Assembly (NCBI GenBank): GCA_002269645.1
Contig: NIVC01001504.1
Span: 186,001 to 250,000, forward strand
Length of the DNA: 64,000 nt
Source of the DNA: Macrostomum lignano
Lineage: Eukaryota
Direction of reading: 5' to 3'
A program made the translations under genes and the position numbers. The notes beneath the pieces were generated by a model. It saw only the letters and a list, made by a program, of their open reading frames with translations. It had not been told where the DNA came from and searched no databases. Shown here piece by piece: positions 21,501-59,388 of this stretch. Each line of letters starts with the position of its first letter. Position 1 is the stretch's first letter.

Positions 21501-24500
21501 ACACAATAATAATACAATATTGCAGACAGGTATAGGAAGAATGCTAACTATATATGTATATGCAAGTTCCTAAAATTTGTTTATTTATGCAAGTATTCTC
21601 AATTGTTATAAGGCTTTTATTTTGACTAAGGCCAAAAAATGGTGACTTAGCCAAGTTAAGGCTGAAGTGGGTTTTAATAAATAAAGTTTAGAAAAAATCA
21701 AGACAAATTGATCAGTTTATGCATAAAAATGCAAAGAATATTGCTGAGAATAAAATAAACTGATAGTAAATGGAGCAATTTAATAAATAAAAAAATTTAA
21801 GAATAAAAGGATAGTTACTAGTTAATTTTTTTTATTACTAGTGTAATAAAAGAGCAACTTAATTTGACATCAAGCAATGAAAGTTCATGCACTGTATGGC
21901 TCAATTTATGTAGCTATAAACAATAGCATTCCAAAATAGATTTAGCTGAAAATCAAAATACATTGAAAATAATGGATAGTTGTGTCATCTAAAAGCTTAT
22001 TGCATTGTTAGCTAGTTTCGTGCTAAATAGAACCAAGGATTTGTTCAGTGGCCTGCTTGATGACTTTCTGCTAATTGTAGATAGAGTTAACCTTGGCTAA
22101 AATTTCAATACAAGTGCACTAGGATATAGGCCTTTATTGGTCAGCTGTATGACCAATCTGAGAAGTCAATGACAATAGAGATTGCATTTGGGCCATTGTT
22201 AGGGGCTTCAAATAGTTGTTGATATTGGGTTAGACATCCATCCAGTATGTTGGAAGTCAAGTATCAATTAACAGAGGCTGCAAATTTGTAAAATTAGTGC
22301 ATACATGGCTTGTATAATTACTCTTGGCAGCATCTAAAGCCTCTTTGTTAGTGAGGACAGTCTAAATTTAAGGAGGTATAATGATTAAGAATACTGGAAT
22401 TAGGAACTATAGCTTAGTTACCCTTGCAATAGCAGAATAAGCTTATTTAACATAGCAATAAAAAATCAACTCTGAAATGGTCCAAAACCTGCTGTACCAT
22501 TGAATGCTTTTCTGAATGAAGTCAAAATGCAAGTCTCATCAGTTTCGTAAGGTCATCAGCATGTTCTGCTACTTGGATCACAACTCCAATGCCAATCCAG
22601 TTAGAACATTGGTAGACTCCTTCAATCTCTCTTGTTCCAGTTAAGTTGCATTCATGCCATACAAAAATTCAATTCTTCTACTTTTGTAGATTTGGAATTT
22701 ATTCATCTTGAAAAAAACAATAAATAGTTTGGAGACATTTTGCTTTCTATGAATAAATATACTAAAATGACTCAAAAAGTAATATTTTATCAAATATAGA
22801 CTAGTGAATTTCTTTATTTGATTTCGTTTTATATTTCAAAATTTGAAAATATACAAAAGTATTTTAATATTTTCACAATATAAATGTAAGTCATAGTAAA
22901 GCAAAATAATGAGTAAAACTATGCTGTTCTAGTAATATTCCAGGTTAGTAGGCCTAAGCCTTATGTTGACACAAAACACATGCTGAATATGCTATATAGC
23001 TAATTGAGAAGAATAGTTTTACTGTAATATTAAATAATAGTAAAAAGTGCCAAAGAAAATTTATAAAATACTAACATATGTATATTAGATGAAAGCATAT
23101 AAACATGCTAGTACATGTGTTGCATGCTATTAGCATTATAGTCCATTACTCAATATTTGAATAATTAACCATTTTTACAGTTTGCTTTAAGCAAAATATT
23201 GCATTGAAAATGCACTTACACACATCTAACAATGTGCATAGTATGTATGTTTTTTGTTCTCCATATGACATTACGTTCCAAATATGTGCATTTTATGCAT
23301 GTGCATGTTGCTTGGATATAAAGGCAACAAATTACTGCAGGGTATACTGAATACTAGTGGTGCTATAATGTCTCCTCATAGTGAATTTATGTAACTATAT
23401 AATTAGCTGATAAAAACAATTGCCATTCAAATGTGCTGCATATTTTTCTTAGAAAAACTTCTCCTAAACAAAAACTAAAGCTTCTTATCAATAAAACTTG
23501 AACCACCTTAGCAAAGCTAACTGATATTATCTGAAATATTTGTTTCAACTAAACTGTGAAATCATATGTATATCTACTTTCTGCCATTTGACAAAAAACA
23601 AATGACTGTTTAACAAAAAGGCTTTTAATTAAAAGGTTTTTGATGAAATGTCAATCTACTTTTAGACTAAACAGCCATATGCAGCCTTCAGATGCACCAT
23701 GCAATAGCTGTAGCTGAGCTGTTGGTTGAATATGTGGCCAAATTGTGGCAAGTGTAATCCATTATTTTTATTTTTATTATCTTCTACTTCTAAATAGAAG
23801 TATGCAAAAATTATCTTTTGCAATGTTATACTTAGTCAAATAGGTTTTCTAAGTATATTACAAATAAATTTTCTAAAAAACACCCAAAAGCAAGTGTTGA
23901 AAAAAATAATTTTAAAGAATATCTTATAATAATAATAATTGTTTTTGATTTTGATTGCTTCATTAGTCCAAAGCAATGTTTAGGGCCTAGTGTTAAATAT
24001 CTTAGCAATGAAGTCAACTTTTGCAGTGCTTGAGGTGTTATTTTAAAGCTAAAATGTATAAAAAATTAATAAACAATTTTGAAACAAGTTTATCTTATCA
24101 AGCTAATACTATGATAAAAAATCAATGGTAGGTCAAGATGATATGTAATTAGAGTGTTACTAAGAAATCTTTGAATTTATTTATCTTATATTTTAACTTT
24201 AATTAAAAATGTAAGTTTTTATAATTTGATACCAAACAATTATATAAATGTTTGTTTAAAAGAAAGTTAAACTAGGTTAGGCCTAGTTTTATTAACAAAA
24301 GTATAAATAACTTTTGAATATGACCTATTTAAATATGAATATCTCTTGGGAAAACTACATATGACTTATTTTTAGGTTAAATTTTAATTCTATTAAAAGA
24401 GTTTCTTTTAACAGTAGTTTAGTGTCTATAAATATCAAAAAGTAAAATTATTATTAGCTTCAAAGTCATTCCATAGAATCATACTTTTGAAATAATTCAT

Positions 24501-27500: not shown

Positions 27501-30500
27501 ATTTGAATCATCAATAATGTCATAATTCTTAGTATTTGAAGACTCACGAGTTGTAAAACTCGAATAATCTGTAAACATGGAGTCTGCAAGTCTGCTGGAG
27601 TTCGAGTCTTTCGGACTACGAATAAAATAATATGATACCTATCTCAGTTGTCAGGATGTTTGGCAACAGAAAATCATTTATACACAACTGTTCTACCCGC
27701 TGCGCATGGAAATATAAATCCCATTAATCTTATTTTTGGCAGACAAGCCGTTCAAGCCTACCCGACTCCAACATGTGGATGTCGGCCGCGACTGGGTGCG
27801 CCTAGGCTGGGAGCCGCCGCGCCAGCAAAGCCACTTGCCTGTCGACCACTACGAGGCCGCCAGCTGGCCCGACCTCGACGAGCCTGACAGCCGGAAACCG
27901 CCAGCCGGCGTGACCTGGCAGCGGGTCCGTGACAACAACTCATTTTTGCACAGCCATCGGTTCAGCTACCTGTCGGTCTACACCTCCTACTGCTTCGCCG
28001 TGCGCGCCGTCAACAGCATCGGAGCCGGCCAGCCAGCCGTCCGCTGCGGCATCCGCACTAGGGGCCGGCCACCTGAGAGAGGCGCCGTCAGCGCCAGGCT
28101 GGTCAGCGCCAACGCCACACGAGCGGCCTTCGTTGTGGCCTACCAGCCCGACCGCCTGCACGGCCGCCTGCGTCAGGTGGAGCTGCTCTGCCAGCTGATG
28201 CGCTACCGGGAGCTCAACGTCGCCTTCGCACCAGAAGATCGGCAACTGTCGGCGCTGGGATTGAGGGCCTTGCTGCCGTCGCGCGCGTTTAACGATTCCA
28301 CCGAGCTGGTAGATTTCTACTTTAATCCAAGTTTACCTTGGAAATCCCCATCCCAAATCTCCCCTAATGTAATCCCCATCCAAATCTCCCCTAATGTAAT
28401 CCCCATCCAAATCTCCCCTAATGTAATCCCCCTCCAAATCTCCCCTAATGTAATCCCCATCCAAATCTCCCCTAATGTAATCCCCATCCAAATCTCCCCT
28501 AATGTAATCCCCCTCCAAATCTCCCCTAATGTAATCCCCATCCAAATCTCCCCTAATAAAATCCCCATCCCAAATCTCCCCTGATAATATCCCATCCCAA
28601 ATCTCCCTTAATCAAATCCTTATCCAAATCTTCCTTAATCAAATCCTTATCCAAATCTCCCCTAATAAAATCCCCATCCCAAATTTCCCCTAATCAAATC
28701 CCATCCCAGCATCCCCAATAACGTCGCACCCTAATCTCCCTAATTTTTCTCTTTTATAATCTTTAATCTCCCTAATGAAATACCGTATCTCTAATTGAAT
28801 CTACATTTGTATGAATTATTCATACAATCATAACTGATTCTGGCTCATACGCATACATCTTAGTTCCTATTCTGGAATTTCTTCCCTCTCATACAGGTGT
28901 GGCTTGCCGAAGATCTGCAGCCCTACAGCCAGTACCGGCTGATCATAAAGGCGTACAATGAGGAGTACGATGGACCGCCGGAAGTAACAAAATTCAACAC
29001 AACGGAGGGCCGTGAGTGCTTTCTCAGCCTTTCTCAGCCTTTCTCGGCCTTTCTCAGCCTTTCTCAGCCTCTCTCAGCCTTTCTCGGCCTTTCTCAGCCT
29101 TTCTCAGCCTTTCTCGGCGAGCGTCTTGGAAACAAATTCATTAAAGAAATCCATTTATTTGTCAACTTTTTAAATAAATCCTCTAATAACTGCCTCTGAT
29201 GTGCCGCTGACTCCATTGATAATTCCCTTTGACGTGCCGCTCACTCCGTTGATAATTCCCTTTGATGTACCGCTCACTCCATTGATAATTCCCTTTGATG
29301 TACCGCTCACTCCATTGATAATTCCCTTTGATGTCCCGCTCACTCTATTGATAGAATTCCCTTTGATGCGCTGCTCACTCCATTGATAATTCCCTTTGAT
29401 GTGCCGCTCACTCCATTAATAATTCCCTTTGATGCGCCGCTCACTCCATTGATAATTCCCTTTGATGCGCCGCCCCGCAGTGGCGCCGTCCCCCAGCCTG
29501 ATGCAGGAGACGCAGCTGCAGTTTGACACGAACGCCACTCTCACCTGGAACCAAAGACGGCGAATTCCCGGCCAGTTGCTATACTACAGGGTCCGCTACT
29601 CCCCCATCTCCTATCCGGCTGTCCAGTATCAGCTGAACGTGTCTGCCCAGCACAACCGAGTCGTGCTCACCAAACTGCAGCCCATGAGCGAATACCGGGT
29701 CTCCCTGGCCGCTGTCACCGGCCTGGGCCCGGGCGCCGAGTCCAACACCATCGTGGTGTCCACCGAGCCCAGCTGGCCCAGCTCGCCAAGGCAGGTGCAA
29801 ATCGAAACGGGCTTCGAGGCCGGCGCCGTGGTCTCCTGGGCGCACAGCCGCTTCACTATGCAGATTCCCAAATCCCGAAAGAGCTCGGGCATCCCACTCG
29901 AAGCGCCGGCTAGGAAATATCCCGCCCACCTGCTGGCCTTTCGCGTCAGCTGGGCCTTCCTGGACCCGGCCGGTCCCGGGGCTGCCAGCACCTTCGGGCA
30001 CATGGAGACCAAGCCTCTTAATGACATGTCCGGCTGCAGCTGCTCAGCCACGGACTGGAGGCCCCGCTCCCCCAGCACGCCCTGCCGGGATCAGCCGGAT
30101 CGGATTTGCGTGAGTTCTCAGACTGCATCCCCCCAGCATCCTCTATACTGCATCCCCCAGCATCCTCTATACTGCATCCCCCAGCATCCTCTATACTGCA
30201 TCCCCCAGCATCCTCTATACTGCATCTCCCAGCATCCTCTATACTGCATCTCCCAGCATCCTCTATACTGCATCTCCCAGCATCCTCTCTACAGCATCCC
30301 CCAGCATCCTCTCTACAGCATCCCCTAGCATCCTCTTTACTGCATCTCCCAGCATCCTCTATACTGCATCTCCCAGCATCCTCTATACTGCATCTCCCAG
30401 CATCCTCTCTACAGCACCCCCCAGCATCCTCTCTACAGCATCCCCTAGCATCCTCTTTACTGCATCTCCCAGCATCCTCTATACTGCATCTCCCAGCATC

Positions 30501-33500
30501 CTCTATACTGCATCTCCCAGCATCCTCTATACTGCATCTCCCAGCATCCTCTATACTGCATCTCCACAGCATCCTCTGTACTGCATCCCCCAGCATCCTC
30601 TATACTTCACCCCTCAGCATCCTCTATACTGCATCCCCCAGCATCCTCTATACTGCATCCCCCAGCATCCTCTATACTGCATCCCCTAGCATCCTGTATT
30701 CTGTATTCCTCTATTCATCCAAGGTGTGATCAGTGCCAATTATCCCATAATCCCAGGAGTGATCAATGCCACGTAGAAACCAGTGCAATGCTGAGTTTTT
30801 ATTGATATATTCCCAGTTTCACAGCCCTCCCTCATCTCTTACCCCCCCACCCTGCCAAACTCCAGGTGCTAATTCCATGGTCCCAGCTGGCCGCCGGACG
30901 CTCTCCGCCGGACGACTCAGGCGTGCTCACCCGGGTCAGCTTCTCCGTGCGCAGCGTCGGCCTGTCGCAGTGGTCGGCCGGCCGGCGCTATCCCGGCCAC
31001 GTGTCCGAGGATTGCACTACCGACATTCCGGCCGCGTACATTTTCCCCAAATCGGCGGCCTCCCATTCCACCAAGCAGCCGGTCATTGTGGGCGTCATTG
31101 TTGGTGGCTGCATCATGCTGTTGGCTATTGGGATCATCGCCTTCCTAATTTGGAAGTGGCTCTGCAGCCACCGTGGCTACCGCAGGCCGTTCGGCACTGC
31201 CATGGAAACGATGGAGTTCGTAGGTGAGGCTGCCTCTCATTGTGTTCTGCACCCTGTCAGGTCTTTGTCGCGTAGCCTTTATTGTACGCTTCAGGGTCAT
31301 GTCAGGTCATTGTACATATTAGGGTCATGTCGCGTCATGGAAGACTTTAGGGTCATGTCGGGTCATTAGACACTTTAGGGTCATGTCGGGTCATTAGACA
31401 CTTTAGGGTCATGTCGGGTCATTAGACACTTTAGGTTCATGTCGGGTCATTAGACACTTTAGGATCATGTCAGGTCATTAGAGACTTTAGGGTCATGTCG
31501 GGTCATTAGACACTTTAGGATCATGTCAGGTCATTAGAGACTTTAGGGTCATGTTGGGTCATTAGAGACTTTAGGGTCATGTCGGGTCATGTAAGACTTC
31601 GGGGTGGTTTCGGGTCATTGTTAATAATACTAGGGTTCGTGCCAGGTCATCGCGAGACTGTTGAACCAGGCACTTCAGGTCCTCTTGTAAGCCTCAGGGC
31701 CTTTTAAGTCAAATCACCCCTAAGTGCGGTCACCTTTGGTTCATCCCGACGCGAACCCGCAGAGCACGAGTACAACGGCACTCGCAGCTCCGGCTGCCGG
31801 CCCCAGTTCCGGCCGTACAGCCAGACGGAATTCAAGCCGCTCAGCATCCCGGATTTCAGGGAGCACGTGCTGGCCAGCCACGCCAACGACAACTCGGCCT
31901 TCCAGATGGAGTTCGACAGCGTGCAGCAGTCAACCCACCGGGACTGGCCGGCCCTGCACTGGAAGCAGCCGGAGAACCTGGCTAAGAACAGATACACAGA
32001 CATCTACCCGTGTGAGTGACACCTCAGGTGGGATGTGCGGTCAGCGCCTCAGTTATCTTCACTGACTCCTGTGCCACTCATCATGTGATCAACTTTAATT
32101 TCAGTTGATCACAGCCGGGTTATTCTGTTCAGCAATAGCAGGAAGAAGCGAGGGGACTACATCAATGCAAACTATGTCGACGTGAGTGGCTTGTTATTGC
32201 TCTCATTGCTAAAAGAAATTCCAGAATCCCAATAGCCATCCCAGAATCTCAACAGCAATCCCAGAATCCTAGTAGCAATCACAGATCCCAGAATCCTAAA
32301 AGCAATCCCAGAATCCTAATAGCCATTCCAGATCCCAGAATCCCAATAGCCATCCCAAATCCCAGAATCCTAATAGCCATTCCAGATCCCAGAATCCTAA
32401 TAGCCATTCCAGATCCCAGAATCCTAATAGCCATTCCAGATCCCAGAATCCCAATAGCCATTCCAGATCCCAGAATCCTAATAGCCATCCCAGAATCTCA
32501 ACAGCAATCCCAGAATCCTAATAGCAATCCCAGAATCCCAATAGCCATTTCAGATCCAGAATCCTAATAGCAGTCCCAGATCCAGAATCCTAATCGCAAT
32601 CCCAGATCCAGAATCCTAATAGCAATCCCAGATCCCAGAATCCTAATAGCCATCCCAGAATCCTAATAGCCATCCCAGATCCCAGAATCCTAATAGCCAT
32701 CCCAGATCCAGAATCCTAATAGCAATCACAGATCCCAGAATCCCAATAGCAATCCCAGATCCCAGAATCTCAAAAGCAATCCCTGTGATTTCTGATCACA
32801 AATCTCTGAGTCCCAATAGGAATCCCAGTGATCCAAATTCCAATCCCAATAGCGATCCCAATAGCCATCCCAGAATTCTAATAGCGATCCCAAATCCCAG
32901 ATCCCAATCTCAACCGCATTCAATACTGACCCTCCGCAGGGCTACCACCGGCCCAAGGCCTACATCGCCTGCCAGGGCCCGCTGCCGGCCACGTTCGACG
33001 ACTTCTGGCTGATGGTCTGGGAGAACAAGAGCAGCGTGGTGGTCATGATCTCCAACTTTGTGGAGCGCGGAAGAGTGAGTCGTCTGTAGGGCAATTAGAT
33101 GCGGCTGATGAAGCTTGGCCAGGGGTTTTATCGGGAATTATTAAGGCTATTGCTTGCTATAGATAATGCCCAATGTTTATTGTGAATTAAGAGCCTTGGA
33201 GCTGTGGATGAAGTGTTTATAGGGAAGCTGAGCTGTGGGAGAATTTCAGCAAGGCCGACCCCCCCCCCCGCAGCGCAAGTGCGACCAGTACTGGCCGGGC
33301 AGCGGGTCGCAGACCTACGGCCACATCTCGGTGAGGTTCATCAGCCAGGAGAGCAAGGCCGCCTATTGCCTGCGCAAGTTCGGCATCCGGGACACGCGGG
33401 CGAAGAAGTCCGTGAAGGAGCGGCTGGTGCACCACTACCTGTACTCAGAGTGGCCGGACTACGGCGTGCCCCAGTACCCGCTGCCGGTGCTCAACTTTGT

Positions 33501-35921
33501 GCAGAAGTCGATCAGGTCGTCTGATGACCACGGGCCTATTGTGGTGCACTGCAGGTGACTGCCCTGTTAATGCTCTGTTGATATATTGATACAGTAGCAT
33601 CTTTGTTGATAGATTGATACAGCAGCTCTATTGATATATTGATACAGTAGCAGCTCTATTGATAGATTGATACAGCAGCTCTATTGATAGATTGATACAG
33701 CAGCTCTATTGATAGATTGATGCAGCAGCTCTATTGATAGATTGATGCAGCAGCAGCTCTATTGATAGATTGATGCAGCAGCAGCTCTATTGATAGATTG
33801 ATGCAGCAGCAGCTCTATTGATAGATTGATACAGCAGCAGCTCTATTGATAGATTGATGCAGCAGCAGCTCTATTGATAGATTGATGCAGCAGCAGCTCT
33901 ATTGATAGATTGATACAGCAGCAGCTCTATTGATAGATTGATACAGCAGCAGCTCTATTGATAGATTGATGCAGCAGCAGCTCTATTGATAGATTGATGC
34001 AGCAGCAGCTCTATTGATAGATTGATGCAGCAGCAGCTCTATTGATAGATTGATGCAGCAGCAGCTCTATTGATAGATTGATACAGCAGCCCTAATATTA
34101 GCGCTGCTATTCCGCCATCCCCGCAAGCGCGGGCGTCGGCCGCACGGGCACGTACATCTGCATTGAGGCGCAGATCCGGCAGATTCTGCAGCAAAAGACG
34201 GTGAACGTGCGCGGCTTCCTGGAGCACATCCGGCAGCAGAGGATGCGCCTGGTGCAGACGGAGGAGCAGTACGTCTTCATTCACGACGTGCTGCTGGAGT
34301 TCCTGCTGTGCCCGGAACGGGAGGTGCCCAGGGACCAGCTGACCAGCTACATCAAGGGGCTGGACGAGCCCGGACCCTGCGGCTGCAGCAGGCTGGAGAC
34401 TCAGTACCAGGTGCGCACCTCGCTCACTCTCTTAATTCACAGTTAGCCTTTGAATAGCCACGCCCTGACCCCTAACCAACCCCTGCCCATTCCCCGTGTC
34501 TGATTCTCCCTAATCCCCTGTTTGATGCTCCCTAATCCCCTGTCTGATGCTCCCTAATCCCCTGTCTCCTGCTCCCTAATCACCTGTCTAATGCTCCCTA
34601 ATCCCCTGTCTGATGCTCCCTAATCCTCTGTCTGATGCTCCCTAATCCCCTGTCTAATGCTCCCTAATCCCCTGTCTCATGCTCCCTAATCCCCTGTCTA
34701 ATGCTCCCTAATCCTCTGTCTGATGCTCCCTAATCCCCTGTCTCATGCTCCCTAATCACCTGTCTAATGCTCCCTAATCCCCTGTCTGATGCTCCCTAAT
34801 CCTCTGTCTGATGCTCCCTAATCCCCTGTCTAATGCTCCCTAATCCCCTGTCTGATGCTCCCTAATCCCCTGTCTGATGCTCCCTAATCCTCTGTCTGAT
34901 GCTCCCTAATCCCCTGTCTAATGCTCCCTAATCCCCTGTCTCATGCTCCCTAATCCCCTGTCTAATGCTCCCTAATCCTCTGTCTGATGCTCCCTAATCC
35001 CCTGTCTAATGCTCCCTAATCCCCTGTCTGATGCTCCCTAATCCTCTGTCTGATGCTCCCTAATCCCCTGTCTCATGCTCCCTAATCCCCTGTCTAATGC
35101 TCCCTAATCCCCTGTCTGATGCTTCCTAATCCCTGTCTGATGTTCCCTAATCCCCTGTCTCATGCTCCCTAATCCCCTGTCTGATTCTCCCTAAACCCCT
35201 GTCTCATGCTCCCTAATCCCCTGTCTAATGCTCCCTAATCCCCTGTCTGGGTCTCCCTAATCCCCTGTCTAATGCTCCCTAATCACCTGTCTCATGCTCC
35301 CTAATCTCCTGTCTAATGCTCCCTAATCACCTGTCTCATGCTCCCTAATCCCCTGTCTAATGCTCCCTAATCCCCTGTCTGATGCTCATTAATCCCTGTA
35401 TCAAATCCCAAAGATGTCAAATTCACAAAAATCCCAACTAAAGCTCGACTGGGGTCCTCAGCCCCGCACCATAGCAACCAGTGCAGCTCCAACCCGCCGC
35501 TTCAACTCCCGCAGCTGTGCGTGTCCGAGCAGCCGTCGCCGCGTGACCGGATGGCCGCCAAGAAGCCGTGCAACGCGCGCAAGAATCGCTGCATCCTGCC
35601 CAGTGAGTCCGCGCTAGGTTAAACTATTCCTCCTGTTCACCCACATCAGTGATTTGCGCGCTTAGTTCTGTTTTTTTCACCTTCTCTGCAGTCGACTCCC
35701 GCCGCGTGAAACTGACGGCCGAGCCCGGGGTGGAGGGGTCCGACTATATCAATGCGTCTCACCTGCATGTGAGTGCGCTGCCCTGCCGCTGGGCTGGACT
35801 GACTGACAGACACACACACAGACAGACAGACAGACAGATAGACAGATAGACAGACACACAGACACACAGCAGAAAGACAGACACACAGCAGACAGACAGA
35901 CACACAGACAGACAGACAGAC

Positions 35922-35974
<53 letters not shown>

Positions 35975-36017
35975 CACAGACAGATAGACAGACAGACGGA
36001 CAGACAGACAGACAGAC

Positions 36018-36070
<53 letters not shown>

Positions 36071-36097
36071 CACAGACAGACAGACAGACACACAGAC

Positions 36098-36134
<37 letters not shown>

Positions 36135-38307
36135 CACACACACACACAGACAGACAGACAGACAGACAGACATACAGACAGACCAGAACAGGTGCTTAAC
36201 CCTCTCACCACCGCCTCTCTAGGGCTACTTCTCTATGAACGAGTACATCGTGACGCAGCACCCGCTCGAGGAGACCGTGTTCGACTTCCTGAAGATGATC
36301 TGGGATCACAACTGCTCTGTTGTGGTCAGCGTCTACACCGAAGACTCGCCCGATGAGCCGCCCCTGCCCAGCATCTGGCCCACGCCCGAGGACGACATGC
36401 GCGAGGCCGAGCACCTGCAGCTGTACTTTCGGTGAGACAGACCAACCCATCCCATTTCCATGGAATTATCCCATATCCCTGTTATCCCATTCTCATAGAA
36501 TTATCCCATATCCCAATTGTCTCGTTCTCTATAGTATTTTCATTTTGAAATCTCACCACTCTTACCCCTCAAATCCCCGCCCAGCAACGAGGAAGAATAT
36601 CCCTTCGCCACCCGGCGCGAATTCCTCATGGCCACTAAACGCGACGACTACAGCCTGGTGGTGTCGCTGTGGACTCTGAAGCGCTGGCCGGAGCTGCTGG
36701 GCCAGGCCATGGACATGATGAAGCTGGTCGGCGCCGTCTCCGAGCGCAGGGCGCCGCCCGCCGCGCCGCTGATTGTGATGGACACGTGAGCAGCGATTCA
36801 CCTACACTGCACTTTTAGCTGTCAGGGCTCGGTCGAATTGGACCTGCGACTGAGCCGAGCCCCCCTTCCCTAACTGCAGGTACGGAAGCAGCCACGCTGG
36901 CATCTTCTGCGCCCTGTACAGCCTGTACCACCAGCTGCAGCTGGAGCACTCGGTGGACGTGTACTCGCTGTTCAAGCTGTACCACCTGCAGCGGCCTGGC
37001 ATGTTCAACAGCTCGGTGGGTGCCACCAACCCGTCACCCGCTTCAGTGACCACCCCAGACCTCCACAAGGATCCCCCCAGACTCCACAAGGATCCCCCAG
37101 ACTCCACAAGGATCCCCCCAGACTCCACAAGGATCCCCACAGACTCCACAAGGATCCCCCCAGACTCCACAAGGATCCCCCAGACTCCACAAGGATCCCC
37201 CCAGACTCCACAAGGATCCCCCAGACTCCACAAGGATCCCCCAGACTCCACAAGGATCCCCCAGACTCCACAAGGATCCCCCAGACGCCACAAGGATCCC
37301 CCAGACTCCACAAGGATCCCCCAGACTCCACAAGGATCCCCCAGACTCCACAAGGATCCCCCAGACTCCACAAGGATCCCCCAGACTCCACAAGGATCCC
37401 CCAGACTCCACAAGGATCCCCCAGACTCCACAAGGATCCCCCAGACTCCACAAGAATCCCCTCAGACTCCACAAGGATCCCCCAGACTCCACAAGGATCC
37501 CCCAGACTCCACAAGGATCCCCCCAGACTCCACAAGGATCCCCCCAGACTCCACAAGGATCCCCCCAGACTCCACAAGGATCCCCCCAGACTCCACAAGG
37601 ATCCCCCCAGACTCCACAAGGATCCCCCCAGACTCCACAAGGATCCCCCAGACTCCACAAGGATCCCCCAGACTCCACAAGGATCCCCCAGACTCCACAA
37701 GGATCCCTTAGACTCCACAAGGATCCCCCAGACTGTTTCAGGCACTCTCTTACCCTCTCCAACCCCCATATTCGCTAATCTGTCTCCTGCTCTCCAATCC
37801 CCCCTTGCTAATCTGCAAGCCGCCTCATGCATCCCCTCCGCTCGTTGCCCCCAGGCCGACCTCCAGTTCATCTACGAGGTGATCACCTTCCACGCCTCAG
37901 TCAACTCGCCGAGCAGCAGCCTCCTTCCGCAGCGTCGCGACAACGGCGGCACCGGCGGCACCCTCGGCAGCCGGGGCGGCGACAGGCGGGAAGCGCAGCA
38001 GCTGCCGGCCCAGGAGGCTCTGCACATGTCCGAGCAGTTGAAGCAGCTGCAGCAGGAGGTTGAGGAGACCTGCGGCCAGGAGAAGCAGCTCGCCGAGTCG
38101 ACTGTGGCGACCGCCGTCCCCTCTGGTGACGCCGCCATCACCAACGGCTCCGATAGCGGAGCGGCTGCGGCTTCGATGGTGGCGGCGGGCGAGCCCGTCT
38201 CCTTTGGTGACGTCGCCATCGTCAACGGCTCCGATGGTGTTGAGGAGGCGCGCGGGGCTGCCAACGCGAACGGCGCCGTCTCGCTGACGCTTCCGAAGGA
38301 TGCATGA
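15526..38307 (+). CDS. Ptp99A: Receptor protein tyrosine phosphatase, Ptp99A/PTPRG-type catalytic domains (~1418 aa): signal peptide, Ig, FN3 x~4, TM, D1, D2
   Basis: Exons 15526-15546 (tentative), 26462-26840, 27743-28308, 28897-29011, 29481-30109, 30866-31223, 31763-32011, 32105-32181, 32940-33074, 33274-33554, 34128-34410, 35515-35602, 35692-35768, 36223-36431, 36585-36785, 36880-37015, 37855-38307. All junctions are GT-AG and phase-consistent (4257 nt). D1 motifs: [52 protein letters not shown]2: VMDTYGSSHAG, with the catalytic Cys replaced by Asp. Confidence 0.92.
18751..18814 (+). pseudogene. Degenerate 28S (LSU) rRNA fragment spanning the R2/I-PpoI target site
   Basis: gggtaaatggcaggagtaactatgactgtctta matches the universal GGGTAAACGGCGGGAGTAACTATGACTCTCTTA at 30/33. 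aaatgcctcatcagctacttagt matches AAATGCCTCGTCATCTAATTAGT at 20/23. The reference was recalled from knowledge, not searched. Confidence 0.85.
19555..19630 (+). pseudogene. Degenerate tRNA-like / SINE-head relic
   Basis: A-box-like tagcctagatg; anticodon-like arm ctaga-ctgctaa-tgtag; T-arm-like ctggg-tttgaat-cttag. No intact acceptor stem. Confidence 0.3.
19660..20030. repeat. ~23-24-bp degenerate minisatellite
   Basis: ccaccatgtcaaacataaaagag. Confidence 0.9.
20140..20465. repeat. ~18-bp degenerate minisatellite
   Basis: ggggatgcttgctatct variants. Confidence 0.8.
25683..26432. repeat. 31/29-bp minisatellite ending ~30 nt before the PTP Ig-exon acceptor
   Basis: cccaccaatgactagatagtcacccagtcta. 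Confidence 0.96.
26819..27401. repeat. 53-bp minisatellite, ~11 copies, spanning the PTP exon 2 donor
   Basis: gtgaccaatgtgctagtgcgcg|gtgagcagcgggaactgggttttcatgtcac. Confidence 0.97.
28345..28700. repeat. 27-bp intronic minisatellite
   Basis: ccaaatctcccctaatgtaatccccat. Confidence 0.92.
29020..29470. repeat. 10-bp (29020-29115) and 33-bp (29198-29470) intronic arrays
   Basis: ttctcagcct; gatgtgccgctcactccattgataattcccttt, whose last partial unit runs into the acceptor. Confidence 0.9.
30122..30700. repeat. 24-bp intronic minisatellite
   Basis: cccccagcatcctctatactgcat. Confidence 0.95.
31345..31600. repeat. 28-bp intronic minisatellite
   Basis: tcatgtcgggtcattagacactttaggg. Confidence 0.92.
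32220..32905. repeat. Degenerate ~27-bp intronic minisatellite
   Basis: cccagaatcctaatagccattccagat variants. Confidence 0.9.
33590..34090. repeat. 25-28-bp intronic minisatellite, in the intron that splits the catalytic HC-S codon
   Basis: gcagcagcagctctattgatagattgat. Confidence 0.95.
34505..35390. repeat. 22-bp intronic minisatellite
   Basis: tgctccctaatcccctgtctga. Confidence 0.96.
35805..36183. repeat. (GACA)n intronic microsatellite
   Basis: GACA runs; reverse complement of the 12.5-14.1 kb GTCT family. Confidence 0.97.
37055..37735. repeat. 21/22-bp intronic minisatellite
   Basis: cccccagactccacaaggatc. Confidence 0.97.
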
Positions 38308-41373: not shown

Positions 41374-44643
<3,270 letters not shown>

Positions 44644-46365: not shown

Positions 46366-46804
46366 AAGTCTTATCTTTTAAACGGGGAATTTTTCAACTT
46401 GTAAATGGGAATGCTTTACCCTTCTAACTAGAAAATTTCGCCCTTGCTAGATAGGGGAATTCCTTAATTTGCTAAGCGGGAGAACTTCTCACTTCTTAAA
46501 TGTTAAAATATTAAAATTACTCCATTTCTGCTGATTCGAGGGAATCCCCTTGCAGATTAGGCAACACTGGGAGTACGCCACTTGAAAACAGAAACACGAA
46601 CTCCAAGAACACTTTTAGTTGCATTTACTCTGCAAACAAAGCCGAACTTGCAGGAACCCGGACAAAGAGAGACCTGCTTGAAACTACTTTTAGTAGCCAA
46701 TGCTTTCCACACTCGATAATCAAAGCGAATAGCAACTCCAAGAGTCTGTAAGCATGGTGAATGTAATTCCATCCGTCTATGATTAAACAGTTAAATAACT
46801 AATC

Positions 46805-47582
46805 AGAGAGAGTCAGCATCAGAGAGAGTCAGCATCAGAGAGAGTCAGCATCAGAGAGAGTCAGCATCAGAGAGAGTCAGCATCAGAGAGAGTCAGCATC
46901 AGAGAGAGTCAGCATCAGAGAGAGTCAGCATCAGAGAGAGTCAGCATCAGAGAGTCAGCATCAGAGAGAGTCAGCATCAGAGAGAGTCAGCATCAGAGAG
47001 AGTCAGCGTCAGAGAGAGTCAGCATCAGAGAGAGTCAGCATCAGAGAGAGTCAGCATCAGAGAGAGTCAGCATCAGAGAGAGTCAGCATCAGAGAGAGTC
47101 AGCATCAGAGAGAGTCAGCGTCAGAGAGAGTCAGCGTCAGAGAGAGTCAGCATCAGAGAGAGTCAGCATCAGAGAGAGTCAGCATCAGAGAGAGTCAGCA
47201 TCAGAGAGAGTCAGCATCAGAGAGAGTCAGCATCAGAGAGAGTCAGCATCAGAGAGAGTCAGCATCAGAGAGAGTCAGCATCAGAGAGAGTCAGCATCAG
47301 AGAGAGTCAGCGTCAGAGAGAGTCAGCATCAGAGAGAGTCAGCATCAGAGAGAGTCAGCATCAGAGAGAGTCAGCATCAGAGAGAGTCAGCATCAGAGAG
47401 AGTCAGCATCAGAGAGAGTCAGCATCAGAGAGAGTCAGCGTCAGAGAGAGTCAGCATCAGAGAGAGTCAGCATCAGAGAGAGTCAGCATCAGAGAGAGTC
47501 AGCATCAGAGAGAGTCAGCATCAGAGAGAGTCAGCATCAGAGAGAGTCAGCATCAGAGAGAGTCAGCATCAGAGAGTCAGCA
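46805..47582. repeat. 16-bp minisatellite, ~48 copies, just downstream of the VIAAT stop codon
   Basis: agagagagtcagcatc. Confidence 0.98.
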
Positions 47583-47639: not shown

Positions 47640-50600
47640 TCAGGCCCTGGTGTAGGCGAAGGGGATGCTGGAGTTCGCCTGCTGCTTGCCGGTCATCTTG
47701 GCGTGCAGCGCGTAGCCGCTGATGAACATGCCGACGCTGCCGCACAGCACGCCAACGGCGATGATGAAGGCGTCGAACAGCCGGGTGTACAGCGGGCTGG
47801 CGTGCCGCTTCAGCACCAGGTGGAAGTAGGCGGGCCACACGAAGGACAGCATGGTGCCGGTGAAGCTGCCGATCAGGCCGCACAGCAGGGCGAAGTGCGG
47901 CACGGTGATGGCCACCACAAAGGTGAACAGCACCAGCAGGGCCCGCGGCAGCACCGCCCAGCACTTGAACTCCCGCTTCTCGTTCCAGCAGCTGGGCAGC
48001 GGCCGGCCCGTGAAGAGGCTGTTTTCCAGGAAATTGGCAGCTGCGAAGTAGGGCAGCGGGTAAGAGAAGAGCGCCTTCAGCGCCAGCGCGATGTTCACCG
48101 ACACCCGCAGCGGCACATTCGTCAGGTTGTTGGTGATCTCCTCCTTTGTGCTGTCGGCGAAGGTCACGAAGCCGATGTAGCCGAACAGGGCCTTGAAGAT
48201 GGCCGACAGCAGGTGCGTCCAGTTCATCATGCAGGCAAAGCGGCGCTTGTCGATCAGGCTGCCCTCCAGCGTCGGCAGAAAGATGTGCGACGTGTAGGAG
48301 AAGACAATGATGCCCAGCGAGATGGGGAATGTATAGATGTCTATGTGGAACTGCACCTGCGGGATGGGAAATATGCAGATGTCTATGTAAAAACTGGGGA
48401 ATGTGCAGATGTCTATGTATCAAACTGGGCAATGTGCAGATGTCTATGTATGAAACTGGGGAATGTGCAGTTGTCTATGTAAAAGCTGGGAATGTGCAGA
48501 TGTCTATGTAAAAACTAAGGGAATGTGCAGTTATCTACTTAAATGCTGGGAATGTGCAGATGTCTATGTAAAAACTAAGGGAATGTGCAGATATCTATGT
48601 AAAAGCTGGGGAATGTGCAGATGTCTATGTAAAAACTAAGGGAATGTGCAGATATCTACTTAAAAGCTGAGGAATGTGCAGATGTCTATGTAAAAGCTGG
48701 GGAATGTGCAGATGTCTATGTAAAAGCTGGGGAATGTGCAGATGTCTATGTAACAGCTGGGGAATGTGCAGATGTTACTATCAGTAGTCAGCTGGCCTCA
48801 CCTTGGCGGGCTGCCAGTCGGCGGTGCGGGTGAGGCAGTAGACGATGATGATGCCGTTGATGATGACGTGGGTGACGGTGTTCCAGAAGGAGATGAGGCT
48901 CACGTGCCGCAGCGAGGTGAGCGCGGCGCACGGCAGCAGGCAGACGAAGCTGACGCTGACCCAGAAGGTCTTGCTGAGCCCGGCCCCTGGGAAGCAGAAG
49001 TACAGCAGGTCGCCGCACAGCACCAGGTAGAGAATGCAGGTCATCAGCGCCTCCGTGATGGCCGCCGCGTTCACCACCTGGCCGCCCAGCTGGCCGCGGA
49101 ATACGAACTCGGCGATCTCCCGGTAGCTTCCGCGCACGCGGACGCCGTTCTCGTACAGGCAGTCCACCAGCACGCGGCCCGTGTAGCAGCAGACGAAGGC
49201 CACGAAGACGATGCCCAGCACCGACCAGTAGCCGCCGTGCATCACCGCATACGGCAGGCTGACCAGGAACATCCCCTGTGGGCGGTTCGGAATCTCACTC
49301 GGAATCTCACTCAGATTCTCACACTGAATCTCACTCCGAATCTCATTCCGAATCTCACTCGGATTCTCACTCGGAATCTCACTCAGATTCTCACTCCGAA
49401 TCTCACTCAGATTCTCACTCAGATTCTCACTCCGAATCTCACTCCGAATCTCATTCCGAATCTCACTCAGATTCTCAAACGGAATCTCACTCATAATCTC
49501 GTCTGGACTCCCTCTTGGAGCCTCACTCGGAATACCACCCTGAATCTCACATGAAATCTCACCAGGAACAGGAATCTCACCTGGAATATTATCTAGAATC
49601 TTACGAGTACCTGGAATCTCACCCGAAGTCTCACCCGGATCCTCATTATAGAGAAACCATAAGAAAACGTTAGAGTTAAATCGCAATCTCACTCGGAATC
49701 TCACTCGGAATCTCACCTACTCGAATTCCGATCCCCAAGCTCATCTCTGCCTTCCCATTATTTGGGAAAACTCAGAATCCTCAGCCTTTTCTCTTCAAGC
49801 ACCCCAGCAGGCGCTGAACTCAAGTTTCTAATCAATCCCCGCCCTCTGCAGATTCCTGAAGGTCCGGCCTGTCCGATCCGTCACCGGCCGAGGCGCCATC
49901 CGCCATCCATCTCCCCCCGATCAGCAGCCCCTGATAGACTGGCCGCCGGACGTGAGCAGCATCCCCCCAGCCTCCCTAATCAGCTGCCCGGTGATCGATG
50001 AGGCACTCGGTGTCCGCACTTCCTCAGGCGTGGCGCGAACACTGGCAGCACCTGGCCACCTCTGCTCCGGCTGGAAGATGGGATCTTATCTCCTCTTGAA
50101 AATCCCCTCTTAAACTCGATTCCCCATCGAGCTGCACTGCCGACTCCACCGCCCCTCCTGAGGCTCCCATCAGGATTTAAGCGACAGGGGATTTCTAATT
50201 GGAAGTAATGATTGATAAATCAATTCCCCAGGGGCACCCGGGGCAGCGCAGATAAGCACAGCCGATGGATGCGAAGGGGATCAAATCTGGAGAACGGGAG
50301 AGATGAGGCAGAGACGAAGCGAGGCAAACGCAAGGGGAATCAAGCGGGGCAGCAACAAAGGATCTGCCGGGCTGCACAGCGGCAGCAGGTGGCCTGGGGC
50401 CGGCCGAGTTCTCAATATCCGCGAATGAGGGAGGCTGAGAGGAGATGAAGAGAGCTGAGGGATTTCTCTGAGCCGAGCCCGCGGGGTGAGGCTGGCTCGA
50501 TTTCGACACATTCTTGTTTGCGGGGGCTGCGGCGCCCCCCCCCCCCCTCGCTGAAGTGTTTGCTCTGTTTCGAACTCTTGCCAGACTCTGAGCTCTTTGA

Positions 50601-51796
50601 GAAGCAATTTCTTGTTGCTAGCGAAGACCTCGGACCGGCTCAAGCAGACAGGGAACTGCCATTTCCGGCTGGGATTTCGGGGAGCACGCGAATCCGCCAT
50701 CAATGAGAGGCCGTCAGCCTGGTCTGAGAAACAGAGAAAGTTTGCAGAGGGAAGCTGAGGGGTGGCTCAGTTTGGGCCAATTCTCACCTCCGCCGCGCCT
50801 GCTTGCATTATTAATGAGCAGTTTGCGCGACAGTTCCCATCCCGATCAAAGTCCCCATGGACTCAAATCCCCTTTTTTATGAGTAGCTGCAGCAGCCTCT
50901 CTTCTCAACCGGGATGGCACAGTTTCCCAAACTATTAAATTCCACTCTAACGAGCAGTTGAAAGCTTGATGCAGCTCAGCGGGGAGTCTGCGGGACTGAT
51001 GAGGCTCCCCGATTGCTAACTGCAGCGGAAGCTGACCGGCACCTGGTGGCTGGGTGAGATAAAAAACAACTTTAATTATCTTCTAGTTCTCTGAGAAGCT
51101 GATGATGCCGATTGGCACCGAAGGTAGGGGGGGGTCTTCAAGCTGCCAGGTGGTCAACTTATAAATCAATCAATTTTTGCAATCAATGGGTGACACCAGA
51201 ATAACTTGCTCTGCAGAGACTTTCCCCTGGCAACGCTGTGAGCACGAAATAACCATCAATACAAACCAATGCAGTCTTTGAAGACAGGCCCGTGTGCTAG
51301 TAGCACTGTATGACTGTAAGACTGTAAGGCTGTATGACTGTAAGACTGTAAGACTGTATGACTGTAAGACTGTAAGACTGTATGACTGTATGACTGTAAG
51401 ACTGTATGACTGTATGACTGTAAGACTGTATGACTGTAAGACTGTAAATCGTCACATTTTTGCTACAGCTGGTAACTGTACCTTCTCACCAGCACAGCGG
51501 GGGGGGCTCACCTGAATGGCGTTGGTGACGTTCCAGCCGGCCTGCCACTCGTTGATCTGGTCCCGCCCCGAGCCGCCCGCCGTGAACTCGCCGTCGTCAC
51601 CGCCAGCCCGACCGTCGACCGCGCCGTCGTCGGCCTCCTCCACGAAGCGGTGAAATCCCTGCAGGCTGTCCGTCGCGCCGCCGCCGCTGCCGACACCGCA
51701 GCTGCCGCTTCCGCTGCCGTCCTCAGGCAGCTTCGGCCTGGTCAGGAAAGTCCGCAGACGCTGCTGCGGCACCGAGTGAGAGCCGTAGCCGCTCAT
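47640..51796 (-). CDS. SLC32A1: Vesicular inhibitory amino acid (GABA/glycine) transporter, ~491 aa; exons 51796-51512, 49275-48802, 48356-47640
   Basis: WQAGWNVTNAIQ|GMFLVSLPYAVMHGGYW, CCYTGRVLVDCLYE, SYTSHIFLPTLEG, LALKALFSYPLPYFAA, VPHFALLCGLIGSFTGTMLSFVWP; phase-0 GT-AG junctions. Confidence 0.95.
48357..48775. repeat. ~31-bp minisatellite filling VIAAT intron 2, homologous to the first codons of exon 3
   Basis: Unit gggaatgtgcagatgtctatgtaaaactg versus exon ggggaatgtatagatgtctatgtggaactg. Confidence 0.95.
49288..49715. repeat. 12-bp degenerate minisatellite abutting the VIAAT exon 2 acceptor
   Basis: gaatctcactc(c/a/g) variants. Confidence 0.9.
51305..51445. repeat. 8/9-bp repeat
   Basis: gactgtaa/gactgtat. 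Confidence 0.9.
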
Positions 51797-52134: not shown

Positions 52135-53645
52135 ACATCTGACACATCCATCTGACATCTATCTGACACATCTATCTGACACATCTATCTGACACATCCA
52201 TCTGACATCTATCTGACACATCCATCTGACACATCCATCTGACACATCCATCTGACACATCCATCTGACACATTCATCTGACACATCCATCTGACACATT
52301 CATCTGACACATTCATCTGACACATCCATCTGACACATCCATCTGACACATTCATATTACACAGGAATATGACACATTCATCTGACACATTCATCCGACA
52401 CATCCATCCGACACATCCATCTGACACATCCATCTGACACATCCATCTGACACATCCATCTGACACATCCATCTGACACATCCATCTGACACATCCATCT
52501 GACACATTCATCTGACACATTCATCTGACACATCCATCTGACACATCCATCTGACACATTCATCTTACACACCCATCTGACACATTCATCTGACACATCC
52601 ATCTGACACATCCATCTGACACATTCATATTACACAGGAATATGACACATCCATCTGACACATCCATCTGACACATCCATCTTACACACCCATCTGACAC
52701 ATCCATCTGACACATCCATCTGACACATCCATCTGACACATCCATCTGACACATCCATCTGACACATCCATCTGACACATCCATCTGACACATACATCTG
52801 ACACATCCATCTGACACATCCATCTGACACATCCATCTGACACATCCATCTGACACATTCATCTGACACATTCATCTGACACATCCATCTGACACATCCA
52901 TCTGACACATTCATATTACACAGGAATATGACACATCCATCTGACACATCCATCTGACACATCCATCTGACACATCCATCTTACACACCCATCTGACACA
53001 TCCATCTGACACATCCACCTGACACATCAATCTGACACATCCATCTGACACATTCATATTACACAGGAATATGACACATCCATCTGACACATCCATCTGA
53101 CACATCCATCTGACACATTCATCTTACACACCCACCTGACACATCCATCTGAAACATCCACCTGACACATCCATCTGAAACATCCACCTGACACATCCAT
53201 CTGACACATCCATCTTACATAGGAATATGACACATCCATCTGACACATTCATATTACACAGGAATATGACACATCCATCTGACACATTCATCTGACACAT
53301 CCATCTGACACATTCATCTGACACATCCATCTGACACATCCATCTGACACATCCATCTGACACATCCATCTGACACATTCATCTGACACATTCATATTAC
53401 ACCGGAATATGACACATCCATCTGACACATCCATCTTATATAGGAATATGACACATCCATCTGACACATTCATATTACACAGGAATATGACACATCCATC
53501 TTACACAGGAATATGAAACATCCATCTGACACATCCATCTGACACATCTATCTGACACATCCATCTGACACATCCATCTGACACATCCATCTGACATAGC
53601 CATCTGACACATCCATCTGACACATCCTTCTGACACATTCACCTG
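52135..53645. repeat. 13-bp minisatellite (1.5 kb) with periodic higher-order interruptions
   Basis: tctgacacatcca, with recurrent ttcatattacacaggaatatga inserts. Confidence 0.97.
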
Positions 53646-54059
53646 ACTGACGCAAACCTGACGCCTAGCGTGATACGAGCACTTAAAATACAAAAATCTG
53701 ACACACACAACTGACACCCAACAGCGGCATCTGACACTAGCACCTGACACAAACCCCCTGACACCAGCACTTCGCAAATGACTTTATGAAAATACAGGAA
53801 AAGCAAAAACGTCAACTAGAAAAAATTTCTTCATTTGAAAAAACAAATTGTTTGTCAATCCATTGGTTTGAGTTTTATTAGCTGAAAAATTCAAAAGAAC
53901 TTTACTGTCGTAGTTCAAAAATAAAGATAGAAGTTTTCCCAGCTGGGCGCTGCAAGTAGTAACAAAGGCACTTAAAGGTAAACATCCGTATTCAGTCTGT
54001 TGAATCTGTCAGTGTATGTGTCATTGAACGTCAGTAAACTTGTCAGACAATGTGAAAGT

Positions 54060-56257: not shown

Positions 56258-59388
<3,131 letters not shown>

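What the first reader, a model, noticed from the sequence alone, without database searches (positions are those of the whole stretch)
48315..48801. VIAAT intron 2 appears to be made of tandem copies of exon 3: candidate intron gain caught in the act
Seen: the last 40 nt of the intron align to the first 42 nt of exon 3 with the period ending exactly at the splice site (31/40 identical; plus-strand exon CAGCGAGATGGGGAATGTATAGATGTCTATGTGG-AACTG versus intron CTGCGGGATGGGAAATATGCAGATGTCTATGTAAAAACTG). On the sense strand the acceptor cccatcccgCAG is the copy of exonic CCCATCTCGCTG, so one T-to-A change creates the AG. The rest of the intron is ~13 copies of a 31-nt sub-unit, and even the donor end (gtgaggccag...atagtaacatctgcacattcccc) resembles GTGCAG...ATAGACATCTATACATTCCCC. 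The spliced junction is AAG|GTG, a protosplice site. From memory, vertebrate SLC32A1 has only the AIQ|GMF intron (intron 1 here); this needs verifying. Inference: de novo intron birth by exonic tandem duplication followed by minisatellite expansion.
Basis: partly seen in the sequence, partly recalled or inferred. Interest (0 to 1): 0.85.

Follow-up and report, generated by a model that had tools for sequence, protein, structure and literature searches.

The report
Intron built from copies of its exon
In the flatworm Macrostomum lignano, one intron of the GABA/glycine vesicle transporter gene consists almost entirely of tandem copies of the start of the next exon, so it most likely arose by exon duplication, which is a known but rarely well-preserved way of gaining an intron.

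Summary
On the minus strand the window carries the Macrostomum lignano VIAAT/SLC32A1 gene. Its second coding intron (48801..48357, 445 nt, GT-AG) holds an 18-nt lead and 14 tandem units of 29-34 nt. These units are homologous to the first 42 nt of exon 3. The last unit aligns in register up to the acceptor (28/36 ungapped, 31/40 with one gap).

The similarity is far above chance, and the unit occurs nowhere else in the window. The exon is the source, because it encodes the conserved V.F.ID..FPISLG motif.

None of nine other taxa examined has an intron at this site (annelid, brachiopod, two gastropods, spider, tardigrade, hemichordate, rotifer and an unidentified spiralian). Seven of them share intron 1 (AIQ|GMF); the brachiopod model starts just after that site, and the rotifer record and spiralian contig do not reach it.

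Best reading (about 0.6): a 42-nt exonic tandem duplication was turned into an intron and then expanded as a minisatellite. Main rival (about 0.3): a flatworm-specific intron already existed and acquired an amphioxus-style "mirage" array, or absorbed an exonic duplicate.

No M. lignano paralogue or sister-species DNA could be reached, so the two are not separated. "Caught in the act" is overstated, because the copies are 14-22% diverged. This is a new member of a known kind, of moderate interest.

The parts
51512..51796 (-). VIAAT coding exon 1 (ATG ... WQAGWNVTNAIQ), followed by the donor GTGAGC
   Evidence: ORF and junction located. The NAIQ|GMF boundary is shared with Capitella, Saccoglossus, Trichonephila, Paramacrobiotus, Candidula and Elysia.
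49276..51511 (-). Intron 1 (2236 nt), at the ancient bilaterian position. It contains 8-mer and 12-mer minisatellites and more than 1 kb of unique sequence.
   Evidence: Its 12/13 match to the start of exon 2 is not above chance.
48802..49275 (-). Coding exon 2 (GMFLVSLPY ... TADWQPAK), ending CCAAG before the donor
   Evidence: Translation. Identical to the M. lignano UniProt models.
48784..48801 (-). Intron 2 donor and 18-nt lead (GTGAGGCCAGCTGACTAC). The CCAGCTG part already resembles the inter-unit junction of the array.
   Evidence: An in-frame TGA at the 7th intron codon shows the intron must be removed.
48391..48783 (-). Units 1-13 of the exon-derived minisatellite (29-31 nt each, consensus TTACATAGACATCTGCACATTCCCCAGCTT). 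Each unit carries a cryptic acceptor-like TTCCCCAG.
   Evidence: TRF period 30, 13.6 copies, 86% matches, 121-nt higher-order period. Units listed. Identity to the exon core is 16-22/26.
48357..48390 (-). Unit 14, the edge copy. It extends through CCCATCCCGCAG to the acceptor and is in 42-nt register with the exon copy. It supplies the polypyrimidine tract and the AG.
   Evidence: 28/36 ungapped and 31/40 gapped identity to exon 3 nt 1-42. The tail alignment is 14/18. The decamer match is 8/10 against a background of 0.0006-0.003.
48315..48356 (-). Source segment: the first 42 nt of exon 3 (GTGCAG TTCC ACATAGACATCTATACATTCCCCATCTCGCTG), encoding VQFHIDIYTFPISL
   Evidence: The peptide is conserved in nine aligned sequences from seven other phyla and the M. 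lignano paralogue.
47640..48356 (-). Coding exon 3 (VQFHIDIY ... FAYTRA, stop)

Best explanation
Intron 2 of the Macrostomum lignano VIAAT (SLC32A1/unc-47) gene is a lineage-specific spliceosomal intron that was made from coding sequence.

Inferred steps:
1. A 42-nt (14-codon, in-frame) tandem duplication of the segment GTGCAG...CGCTG arose at what is now the start of exon 3.
2. The upstream copy was turned into an intron. Its first bases, sitting behind AAG, gave the donor (AAG|GTG, later GTGAGG). Its pyrimidine-rich coding end (TTC CCC ATC TCG CTG) gave a ready-made polypyrimidine tract. One CTG-to-CAG change gave the acceptor. Alternatively, the duplicated exon-2 AAG gave the acceptor.
3. 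A roughly 12-nt-shortened 30-nt sub-unit of that copy then expanded as a minisatellite to 13 further copies, with a 4-unit higher-order period.

Shown: splicing from 48802 to 48356 restores the ancestral reading frame exactly.
For: - The whole intron except 6-18 nt at its 5' end is alignable to the first 42 nt of exon 3.
- The similarity is far above chance, and the unit is found nowhere else in 64 kb.
- The last copy continues in register through the acceptor. The decamer match is 8/10 against a background of 0.0006-0.003. This argues that even the acceptor region is exon-derived, which a boundary-spanning duplication of an older intron does not predict.
- The exon copy encodes a conserved motif, so copying went from exon to intron.
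- The site carries no intron in Capitella, Lingula, Saccoglossus, Trichonephila, Candidula, Elysia, Paramacrobiotus, the rotifer Didymodactylos or an unidentified spiralian contig. The nearest foreign introns are 8 and 14 codons upstream and 19 codons downstream.
- The predicted junction gives an ungapped alignment, and the intron has an in-frame stop.
- Of 53 minisatellite arrays in the window, this is the only one with a copy inside a coding exon.
- The mechanism itself is established elsewhere (PMC3265369, PMC3443670, PMC2891723, PMC4974935).
Against: - There is no sequence from M. lignano paralogues, homeologous copies, other Macrostomum species or any other flatworm. The intron could therefore predate the duplication.
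- The intron's 5' end does not keep a recognisable GTGCAGTTCC copy. It looks like an ordinary array unit.
- This genome makes minisatellites everywhere (38% of the window). In the neighbouring P450 gene an array begins exactly at a donor site, so arrays can reach splice sites in introns of unknown age.
- A 42-nt first-stage intron may be too short to splice in this species. This was not tested.
- There is no RNA evidence for the junction. The UniProt gene models agree with it but are predictions.
Confidence: 0.6

Rival explanations
1. A flatworm-specific intron already existed at K|V. A minisatellite then arose from a tandem duplication spanning its 3' boundary (last ~10 nt of the intron plus the first ~32 nt of exon 3). 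This is what is called a 'mirage' in amphioxus. The array expanded until it made up nearly the whole intron.
For: - Boundary-spanning minisatellites in pre-existing introns are documented (PMC3087553).
- Minisatellites are extremely frequent here: 55 arrays and 38% of the window.
- The P450 intron 57355-56615 is 685/741 nt array, starting at the donor.
- The comparative data only show that the intron is younger than the flatworm split from other phyla. They do not show that it is as young as the repeats.
Against: - It needs the old intron's last 10 nt to resemble exon nt 33-42 by chance (8/10, background 0.0006-0.003).
- It leaves at most 18 nt of non-array sequence for the old intron.
- It needs a separate, unexplained intron gain in addition to the duplication.
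- None of the other 52 arrays in the window has an exonic copy.
Confidence: 0.22
2. A short older intron lay immediately upstream. A purely exonic 42-nt duplication occurred next to it. A new CAG then shifted the acceptor 42 nt downstream, so the first exonic copy was absorbed into the existing intron and expanded there.
For: It explains the exon-derived acceptor decamer as well as the best explanation does, and it avoids the need for a functional 42-nt intron.
Against: - The duplication would have to begin exactly at the first exon base.
- Only 18 nt, itself partly unit-like, would remain of the old intron.
- No outgroup has an intron at this site.
Confidence: 0.1
3. The interruption is not a functional intron. 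It could be an assembly artefact, or a minisatellite insertion that has disabled this gene copy (a pseudogene among several redundant copies in a polyploid genome).
For: - M. lignano assemblies are redundant, and four near-identical protein models exist (PMC5730564).
- No RNA data were available.
Against: - The boundaries are canonical: AAG|GTGAGG ... polypyrimidine-CAG|G.
- The reading frame is restored exactly and the rest of the CDS is intact.
- The units are diverged and show higher-order structure, unlike a collapse or expansion artefact.
- Gene models from an independent earlier assembly use the same junction.
Confidence: 0.05

Closest known systems
[quoted passage not shown] 2011, PMC3265369; Drosophila cases, PMC2891723; potato RdRp, PMC4974935; review PMC3443670)
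   Same: - A lineage-specific intron at an AG|GT proto-splice site.
- Intron sequence homologous to the adjacent exon, in tandem register.
- Splicing restores the unduplicated coding sequence.
   Different: - The acceptor most likely comes from a point change at the end of the duplicated exon piece rather than from a second AGGT, although the AGGT version is not excluded.
- The founding copy later expanded into a 14-unit minisatellite, so the intron is about ten times the size of the duplication.
- The intron-less ancestral state is shown only in other phyla.
'Mirage' minisatellites at intron/exon boundaries in amphioxus (Adh3 and globin genes; PMC3087553)
   Same: - A minisatellite inside an intron whose units contain sequence of the adjoining exon.
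- Units carry cryptic splice-site-like motifs.
- Edge units differ from the homogenised interior units.
- The structure has been proposed as raw material for intron gain.
   Different: - Mirages sit in ancient, conserved introns, and their units include genuine intron sequence. Here the intron position is not conserved, and even the acceptor-proximal part looks exon-derived.
- The units are 30 nt here, against 150-160 bp in the globin genes (10-72 bp in Adh3).
- Length polymorphism is not known for this locus.
Introns arising from tandem arrays in human genes (Zhuo et al. 2007 PNAS, cited in PMC3087553; paper not held, recalled from memory)
   Same: Tandem repeats that contain splice-site-like sequences provide the donor and acceptor, and the repeats between them become intronic.
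   Different: Those arrays are largely exonic and the introns are alternatively spliced. Here the array is wholly intronic, and retaining the intron would truncate the protein.
Transposon-derived introns (Introners; PMC9860276)
   Same: A young, lineage-specific intron whose sequence origin can be traced.
   Different: There are no dispersed copies in the window, no terminal inverted repeats and no target-site duplication. The sequence source is the gene's own exon.

Membership tests
VIAAT / SLC32A1 / unc-47 gene | Aa_trans (PF01490) transporter with best matches to annotated vesicular inhibitory amino acid transporters, and the conserved AIQ|GMF intron | tested here: met
   - 97% identity to the M. 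lignano Aa_trans protein A0A1I8H881.
- 45-57% identity to the VIAATs listed from many phyla, all carrying PF01490.
- The intron-1 position is shared with six other taxa.
[quoted passage not shown] | The intron position is absent from outgroups (a novel position) | tested here: met
   No intron at the K|V-equivalent site in Capitella, Lingula, Candidula, Elysia, Trichonephila, Paramacrobiotus, Saccoglossus, Didymodactylos or contig L008. No flatworm outgroup was available.
[quoted passage not shown] | The intron sequence is a tandem copy of the adjoining exon sequence | tested here: met
   28/36 ungapped and 31/40 gapped identity in 42-nt register. The array consensus matches the exon at 22/26. 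Null scores are far lower.
[quoted passage not shown] | Both splice sites come from the duplicated AGGT proto-splice site | tested here: inconclusive
   - The donor sits at AAG|GT.
- The acceptor region aligns to exon 3 nt 25-42 (14/18, no gap; needs CTG to CAG). It also aligns slightly worse to the end of exon 2, CAGCCCGCCAAG, with two gaps.
[quoted passage not shown] | Splicing restores the ancestral coding sequence | tested here: met
   The predicted junction gives an ungapped alignment with nine homologues, and the unspliced frame hits TGA after 6 codons. There is no RNA data, so actual splicing is inferred.
[quoted passage not shown] | A close relative or paralogue retains the unduplicated, intron-less state | not testable with these tools
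Mirage minisatellite (amphioxus type) | The repeat unit spans a pre-existing intron/exon boundary, so it contains genuine intron sequence plus exon sequence | tested here: inconclusive
   The units contain 26 nt of exon core plus a 4-5-nt linker. The only candidate 'intron part' (CATCCCGCAG) is itself 8/10 identical to the next exon bases.
Mirage minisatellite (amphioxus type) | It resides in an evolutionarily conserved intron | tested here: not met
   The position is unique to M. lignano among the taxa examined. Conservation within flatworms is unknown.
Mirage minisatellite (amphioxus type) | Allelic or somatic length instability | not testable with these tools
   Only one haplotype is available.
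Transposon-derived intron (Introner) | Dispersed near-identical copies, with terminal repeats or a target-site duplication | tested here: not met
   The unit is absent from the rest of the 64-kb window. There is no flank similarity other than the exon copy. A genome-wide test was not possible.

The most novel reading that the evidence does not exclude
Minisatellites seeded from exon sequence may be a recurrent route of intron birth in Macrostomum lignano. Its genome is 15% simple and tandem repeats overall (PMC5730564), and this window is 38% tandem arrays. Gene redundancy from recent genome duplication would let disrupted copies persist until they are spliced. A genome-wide scan would then yield many young introns whose source sequence, splice-site origin and age can be read directly.
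Probability: 0.15. Interest if true: 0.8.

Novelty: new member of a known kind. Interest (0 to 1): 0.5.

Why it matters
Most introns are too old to show how they arose, so cases with a readable sequence footprint are few and are repeatedly cited (PMC4974935, PMC3443670, 10.1101/051292).

In this case the donor, polypyrimidine tract, acceptor and body of an intron can all be traced to 42 nt of conserved coding sequence. A pyrimidine-rich codon run served as a pre-adapted 3' splice region.

The case also links intron gain by tandem duplication with minisatellite dynamics, in a genome unusually rich in such arrays. M. lignano has transgenesis (PMC5730564), so the proposed steps could be re-enacted experimentally.

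If the rival holds, the locus would instead be, as far as I could find, the first 'mirage'-type boundary minisatellite reported outside amphioxus. That is a smaller result.

Tried and rejected
1. I tried three ways to obtain M. lignano paralogue or homeologue DNA, or cDNA, and all failed. A second protein search centred on the junction returned only unrelated short fragments.
2. I tested whether intron 1's 12-mer array is also exon-derived. This would have shown exon-seeded arrays in an ancient intron. A 12/13 match to the start of exon 2 exists, but other CDS windows score higher against the whole intron, so it is within chance.
3. Protein fragment P0148 starts exactly at the V of the junction, which hinted at a shared intron in another organism. 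Its contig shows uninterrupted coding sequence across the site, so the start is only a gene-caller GTG start.
4. I considered a mobile-element or dispersed-repeat origin. The unit occurs only at this locus in the window.
5. I considered a functional RNA in the intron. There was no meaningful Rfam match (the only match, below its family's gathering score, lies on the opposite strand inside exon 3), and the fold is no more stable than shuffles (z = +1.1).
6. I tested the classical AGGT-duplication alignment of the acceptor region to the end of exon 2.
7. Copying from array to exon is rejected, because the exon peptide is conserved across phyla.

Full report
**What is there.** The region lies in a three-coding-exon gene on the minus strand.
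- Exon 1 is 51796..51512 (ATG ... NAIQ).
- Intron 1 is 51511..49276.
- Exon 2 is 49275..48802 (GMF ... DWQPAK).
- Intron 2 is 48801..48357.
- Exon 3 is 48356..47640 (VQFHIDIY ... stop).

The spliced 491-aa protein is a vesicular inhibitory amino acid (GABA/glycine) transporter. It is 97% identical to a Macrostomum lignano Aa_trans protein (A0A1I8H881). The differences are a frameshifted stretch in that older model. It is 45-57% identical to the VIAATs listed from molluscs, annelids, arthropods and hemichordates. Four near-identical M. lignano models and two 73-78% paralogue models all read ...PAK|VQF... or ...PQK|VQF... across the junction. The window is therefore M. lignano.

**Check of the observation.** Intron 2 is 445 nt, with GTGAGG at its 5' end and CCGCAG at its 3' end. 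The unspliced reading frame hits TGA at the seventh codon.

TRF reports one array (48365-48775) with period 30, 13.6 copies and 86% matches. It also reports a 121-nt, four-unit higher-order period. Split by hand, the intron is an 18-nt lead plus 14 units of 29-34 nt. The consensus is TTACATAGACATCTGCACATTCCCCAGCTT.

Exon 3 begins GTGCAG TTCC ACATAGACATCTATACATTCCCCA TCTCGCTG.
- The array consensus matches the exon at 22/26 in the core.
- The last unit continues past the core through CCCATCCCGCAG, against exonic CCCATCTCGCTG.
- The last 36 intron bases therefore match exon bases 7-42 at 28/36 without a gap, in exact 42-nt register ending at the splice site.

**Is it more than chance?**
- The 25-nt unit with up to 3 mismatches is found 11 times in the window. 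All are here: ten intron units and the exon copy. None is expected from shuffles.
- The exon 42-mer scores 21 in local alignment against the intron. The best of 151 other CDS windows against the intron scores 10. The exon 42-mer against the rest of the window, both strands, scores at most 12.
- The 3' decamer match (8/10) has a background frequency of 0.0006-0.003 in this sequence.

The one overstated detail is the donor end. The first 48 nt align better to neighbouring array units (22.5) than to the exon start (15.5).

**Direction of copying.** The 42 nt encode VQFHIDIYTFPISL. An alignment with the M. lignano paralogue and with Capitella, Lingula, Candidula, Elysia, Saccoglossus, Paramacrobiotus and Trichonephila is ungapped across the junction. 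It conserves V...[IV]D...FP[IV].[LV]G. The exon is therefore ancestral, and the intron units are copies of it.

**Is the intron shared?** I mapped exon structures by tblastn of each annotated protein on its own genomic locus.
- Capitella, Saccoglossus and Trichonephila have only the NAIQ|GMF intron.
- The Lingula model (397 aa, starting just after that site) is a single exon.
- The gastropods Candidula and Elysia have an extra intron 8 codons upstream (CFTK|).
- The tardigrade has introns 14 codons upstream and 19 codons downstream.
- A rotifer protein of 254 aa sits on an 866-nt contig and is uninterrupted across the site.
- A metagenomic spiralian contig is also uninterrupted across the site.

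Intron 1 is thus ancient. Intron 2 is unique to the M. lignano lineage among everything I could examine. The vertebrate structure was not checked directly. The deuterostome Saccoglossus stands in for it.

**Background in this genome.**
- 38% of the window is tandem array: 55 arrays, almost all with private units and sharp edges. The published genome-wide figure for simple plus tandem repeats is 15% (PMC5730564).
- Introns dominated by arrays are normal here. In the neighbouring CYP2-like P450 gene, one intron is 696/830 nt array and the other is 685/741 nt array. The second array starts at the donor itself. An intron made mostly of array is therefore not, on its own, evidence of a special origin.
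- Of 53 arrays tested against their flanks, only the VIAAT intron-2 array has a copy inside a coding exon.
- The apparent match between intron 1's 12-mer array and the start of exon 2 is within chance.

**Most likely history (inferred).**
1. A 42-nt in-frame tandem duplication of GTGCAG...CGCTG occurred.
2. The upstream copy became the intron. It begins with GT behind AAG. It ends in a pyrimidine-rich coding run (TTC CCC ATC TCG CTG) that can serve as a polypyrimidine tract. A single CTG-to-CAG change gives the acceptor.
3. A 30-nt derivative, about 12 nt shorter, then expanded as a minisatellite. The edge units (unit 14, and unit 1 plus the lead, which keep GCTG) escaped homogenisation, as is usual for arrays.

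A variant is the classical Rogers form. There the unit is shifted about 12 nt to the left, so that the duplicated exon-2 AAG is the acceptor. It aligns slightly worse (8.5 with two gaps against 10 with none), but it is not excluded.

**Rivals.** The rivals are an older flatworm-specific intron that later acquired a boundary-spanning 'mirage' minisatellite, as described in amphioxus (PMC3087553), or one that absorbed an exonic duplicate by an acceptor shift.
- Both need an additional unexplained intron gain.
- Both leave at most 18 nt for the older intron.
- The mirage version also needs the 8/10 decamer match to be coincidence.

I put the duplication-born reading at about 0.6, the two pre-existing-intron readings together at about 0.3, and artefact or pseudogene at about 0.05.

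**Age.** Units differ by about 14% from one another, and the edge copy differs by 22% from the exon. The near-identical M. lignano gene copies differ at about 2 of 396 residues. The founding event is therefore older than the latest genome duplication and is not nascent. Three interior units are identical, so array turnover is more recent.

**Other checks.** There was no meaningful Rfam match (the only match, below its family's gathering score, lies on the opposite strand inside exon 3), and the fold is no more stable than shuffled sequence. This gives no support to a structured-RNA reading.

**Comparison with what is known.** Tandem genomic duplication is an accepted intron-gain mechanism. It has an in-vivo demonstration and many indirect cases (PMC3265369, PMC3443670, PMC2891723, PMC4974935). 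Boundary minisatellites and their possible role in intron gain have been described in amphioxus (PMC3087553).

This locus is a new and unusually legible member of that kind. It adds the later minisatellite expansion and a probable point-mutation acceptor. It is not a new category.

**The decisive missing piece.** What is needed is the state of the K|V site in the M. lignano paralogue and in other flatworms. No collection available here holds that DNA.

Noticed in passing
window 1-64000: 38% of the window lies in tandem arrays (55 merged arrays, periods 8-148 nt). Nearly every array has a private unit and sharp edges, and most introns and intergenic spacers carry one. This is well above the 15% reported genome-wide for simple plus tandem repeats.
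   Followed up: partly
window 56615-57355 (minus strand; P450 exons 59388-58483, 57652-57356, 56614-56258): In a CYP2-like cytochrome P450 gene, one intron is 685/741 nt a 30-mer array whose first unit begins at the donor (TTCAAG|GTTTGTG...). Every unit therefore carries a donor-like G|GTTTGT. Whether this intron position is conserved was not tested.
   Followed up: partly
window 6629-7198 (+), 43049-43666 (+), 57759-58454 (-): Three separate arrays with different periods (37, 37 and 20 nt) share the core GGATTGCTAATCTAG. This is a dispersed minisatellite family, possibly carried by a mobile element. One of the three fills the other P450 intron.
   Followed up: partly
window ~15500-25500: A 10-kb AT-rich block (GC 0.22-0.37, against about 0.5 elsewhere) contains no ORF of 80 or more codons. 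Its nature is unknown.
   Followed up: no
window 46802-47576 and 52136-53647: The VIAAT gene is bracketed by large arrays. A 16-mer array of 48.6 copies starts 64 nt after the stop codon, probably in the 3' UTR. A 13-mer array of 116.6 copies lies about 340 nt upstream of the start codon.
   Followed up: no
window 49276-49850 (intron 1, 3' part): The 12-mer array GAGATTCCGAGT ends 13 nt before the acceptor. One UniProt model (A0A1I8I3I1) translates this array as an N-terminal extension (MSEIPFENLSEIRNEIR...), which is an annotation artefact.
   Followed up: yes
L008 1-1687 (JGI metagenome 3300027544, VIAAT-like gene of an unidentified spiralian): The contig has three insertions. Direct repeats of 16-26 nt flank each one, at start-to-start spacings of 165-254 nt. 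The repeats are (near-)copies of the adjoining coding sequence (74-95/291-312, 849-874/1103-1128, 1278-1293/1443-1458). I found no canonical GT-AG solution by eye. They could be odd introns, eliminated sequences or assembly loops.
   Followed up: partly
window 574-2508 (-), 26400-37000 (+), 42557-42961 (+): High-GC3 ORFs mark other genes. There is a GPCR-like gene (FERYQAVCRPL), a receptor-type protein tyrosine phosphatase with several exons ([16 protein letters not shown]) separated by array-filled introns, and an EF-hand protein ([13 protein letters not shown]). The names come from motifs seen in ORF translations and were not searched.
   Followed up: no
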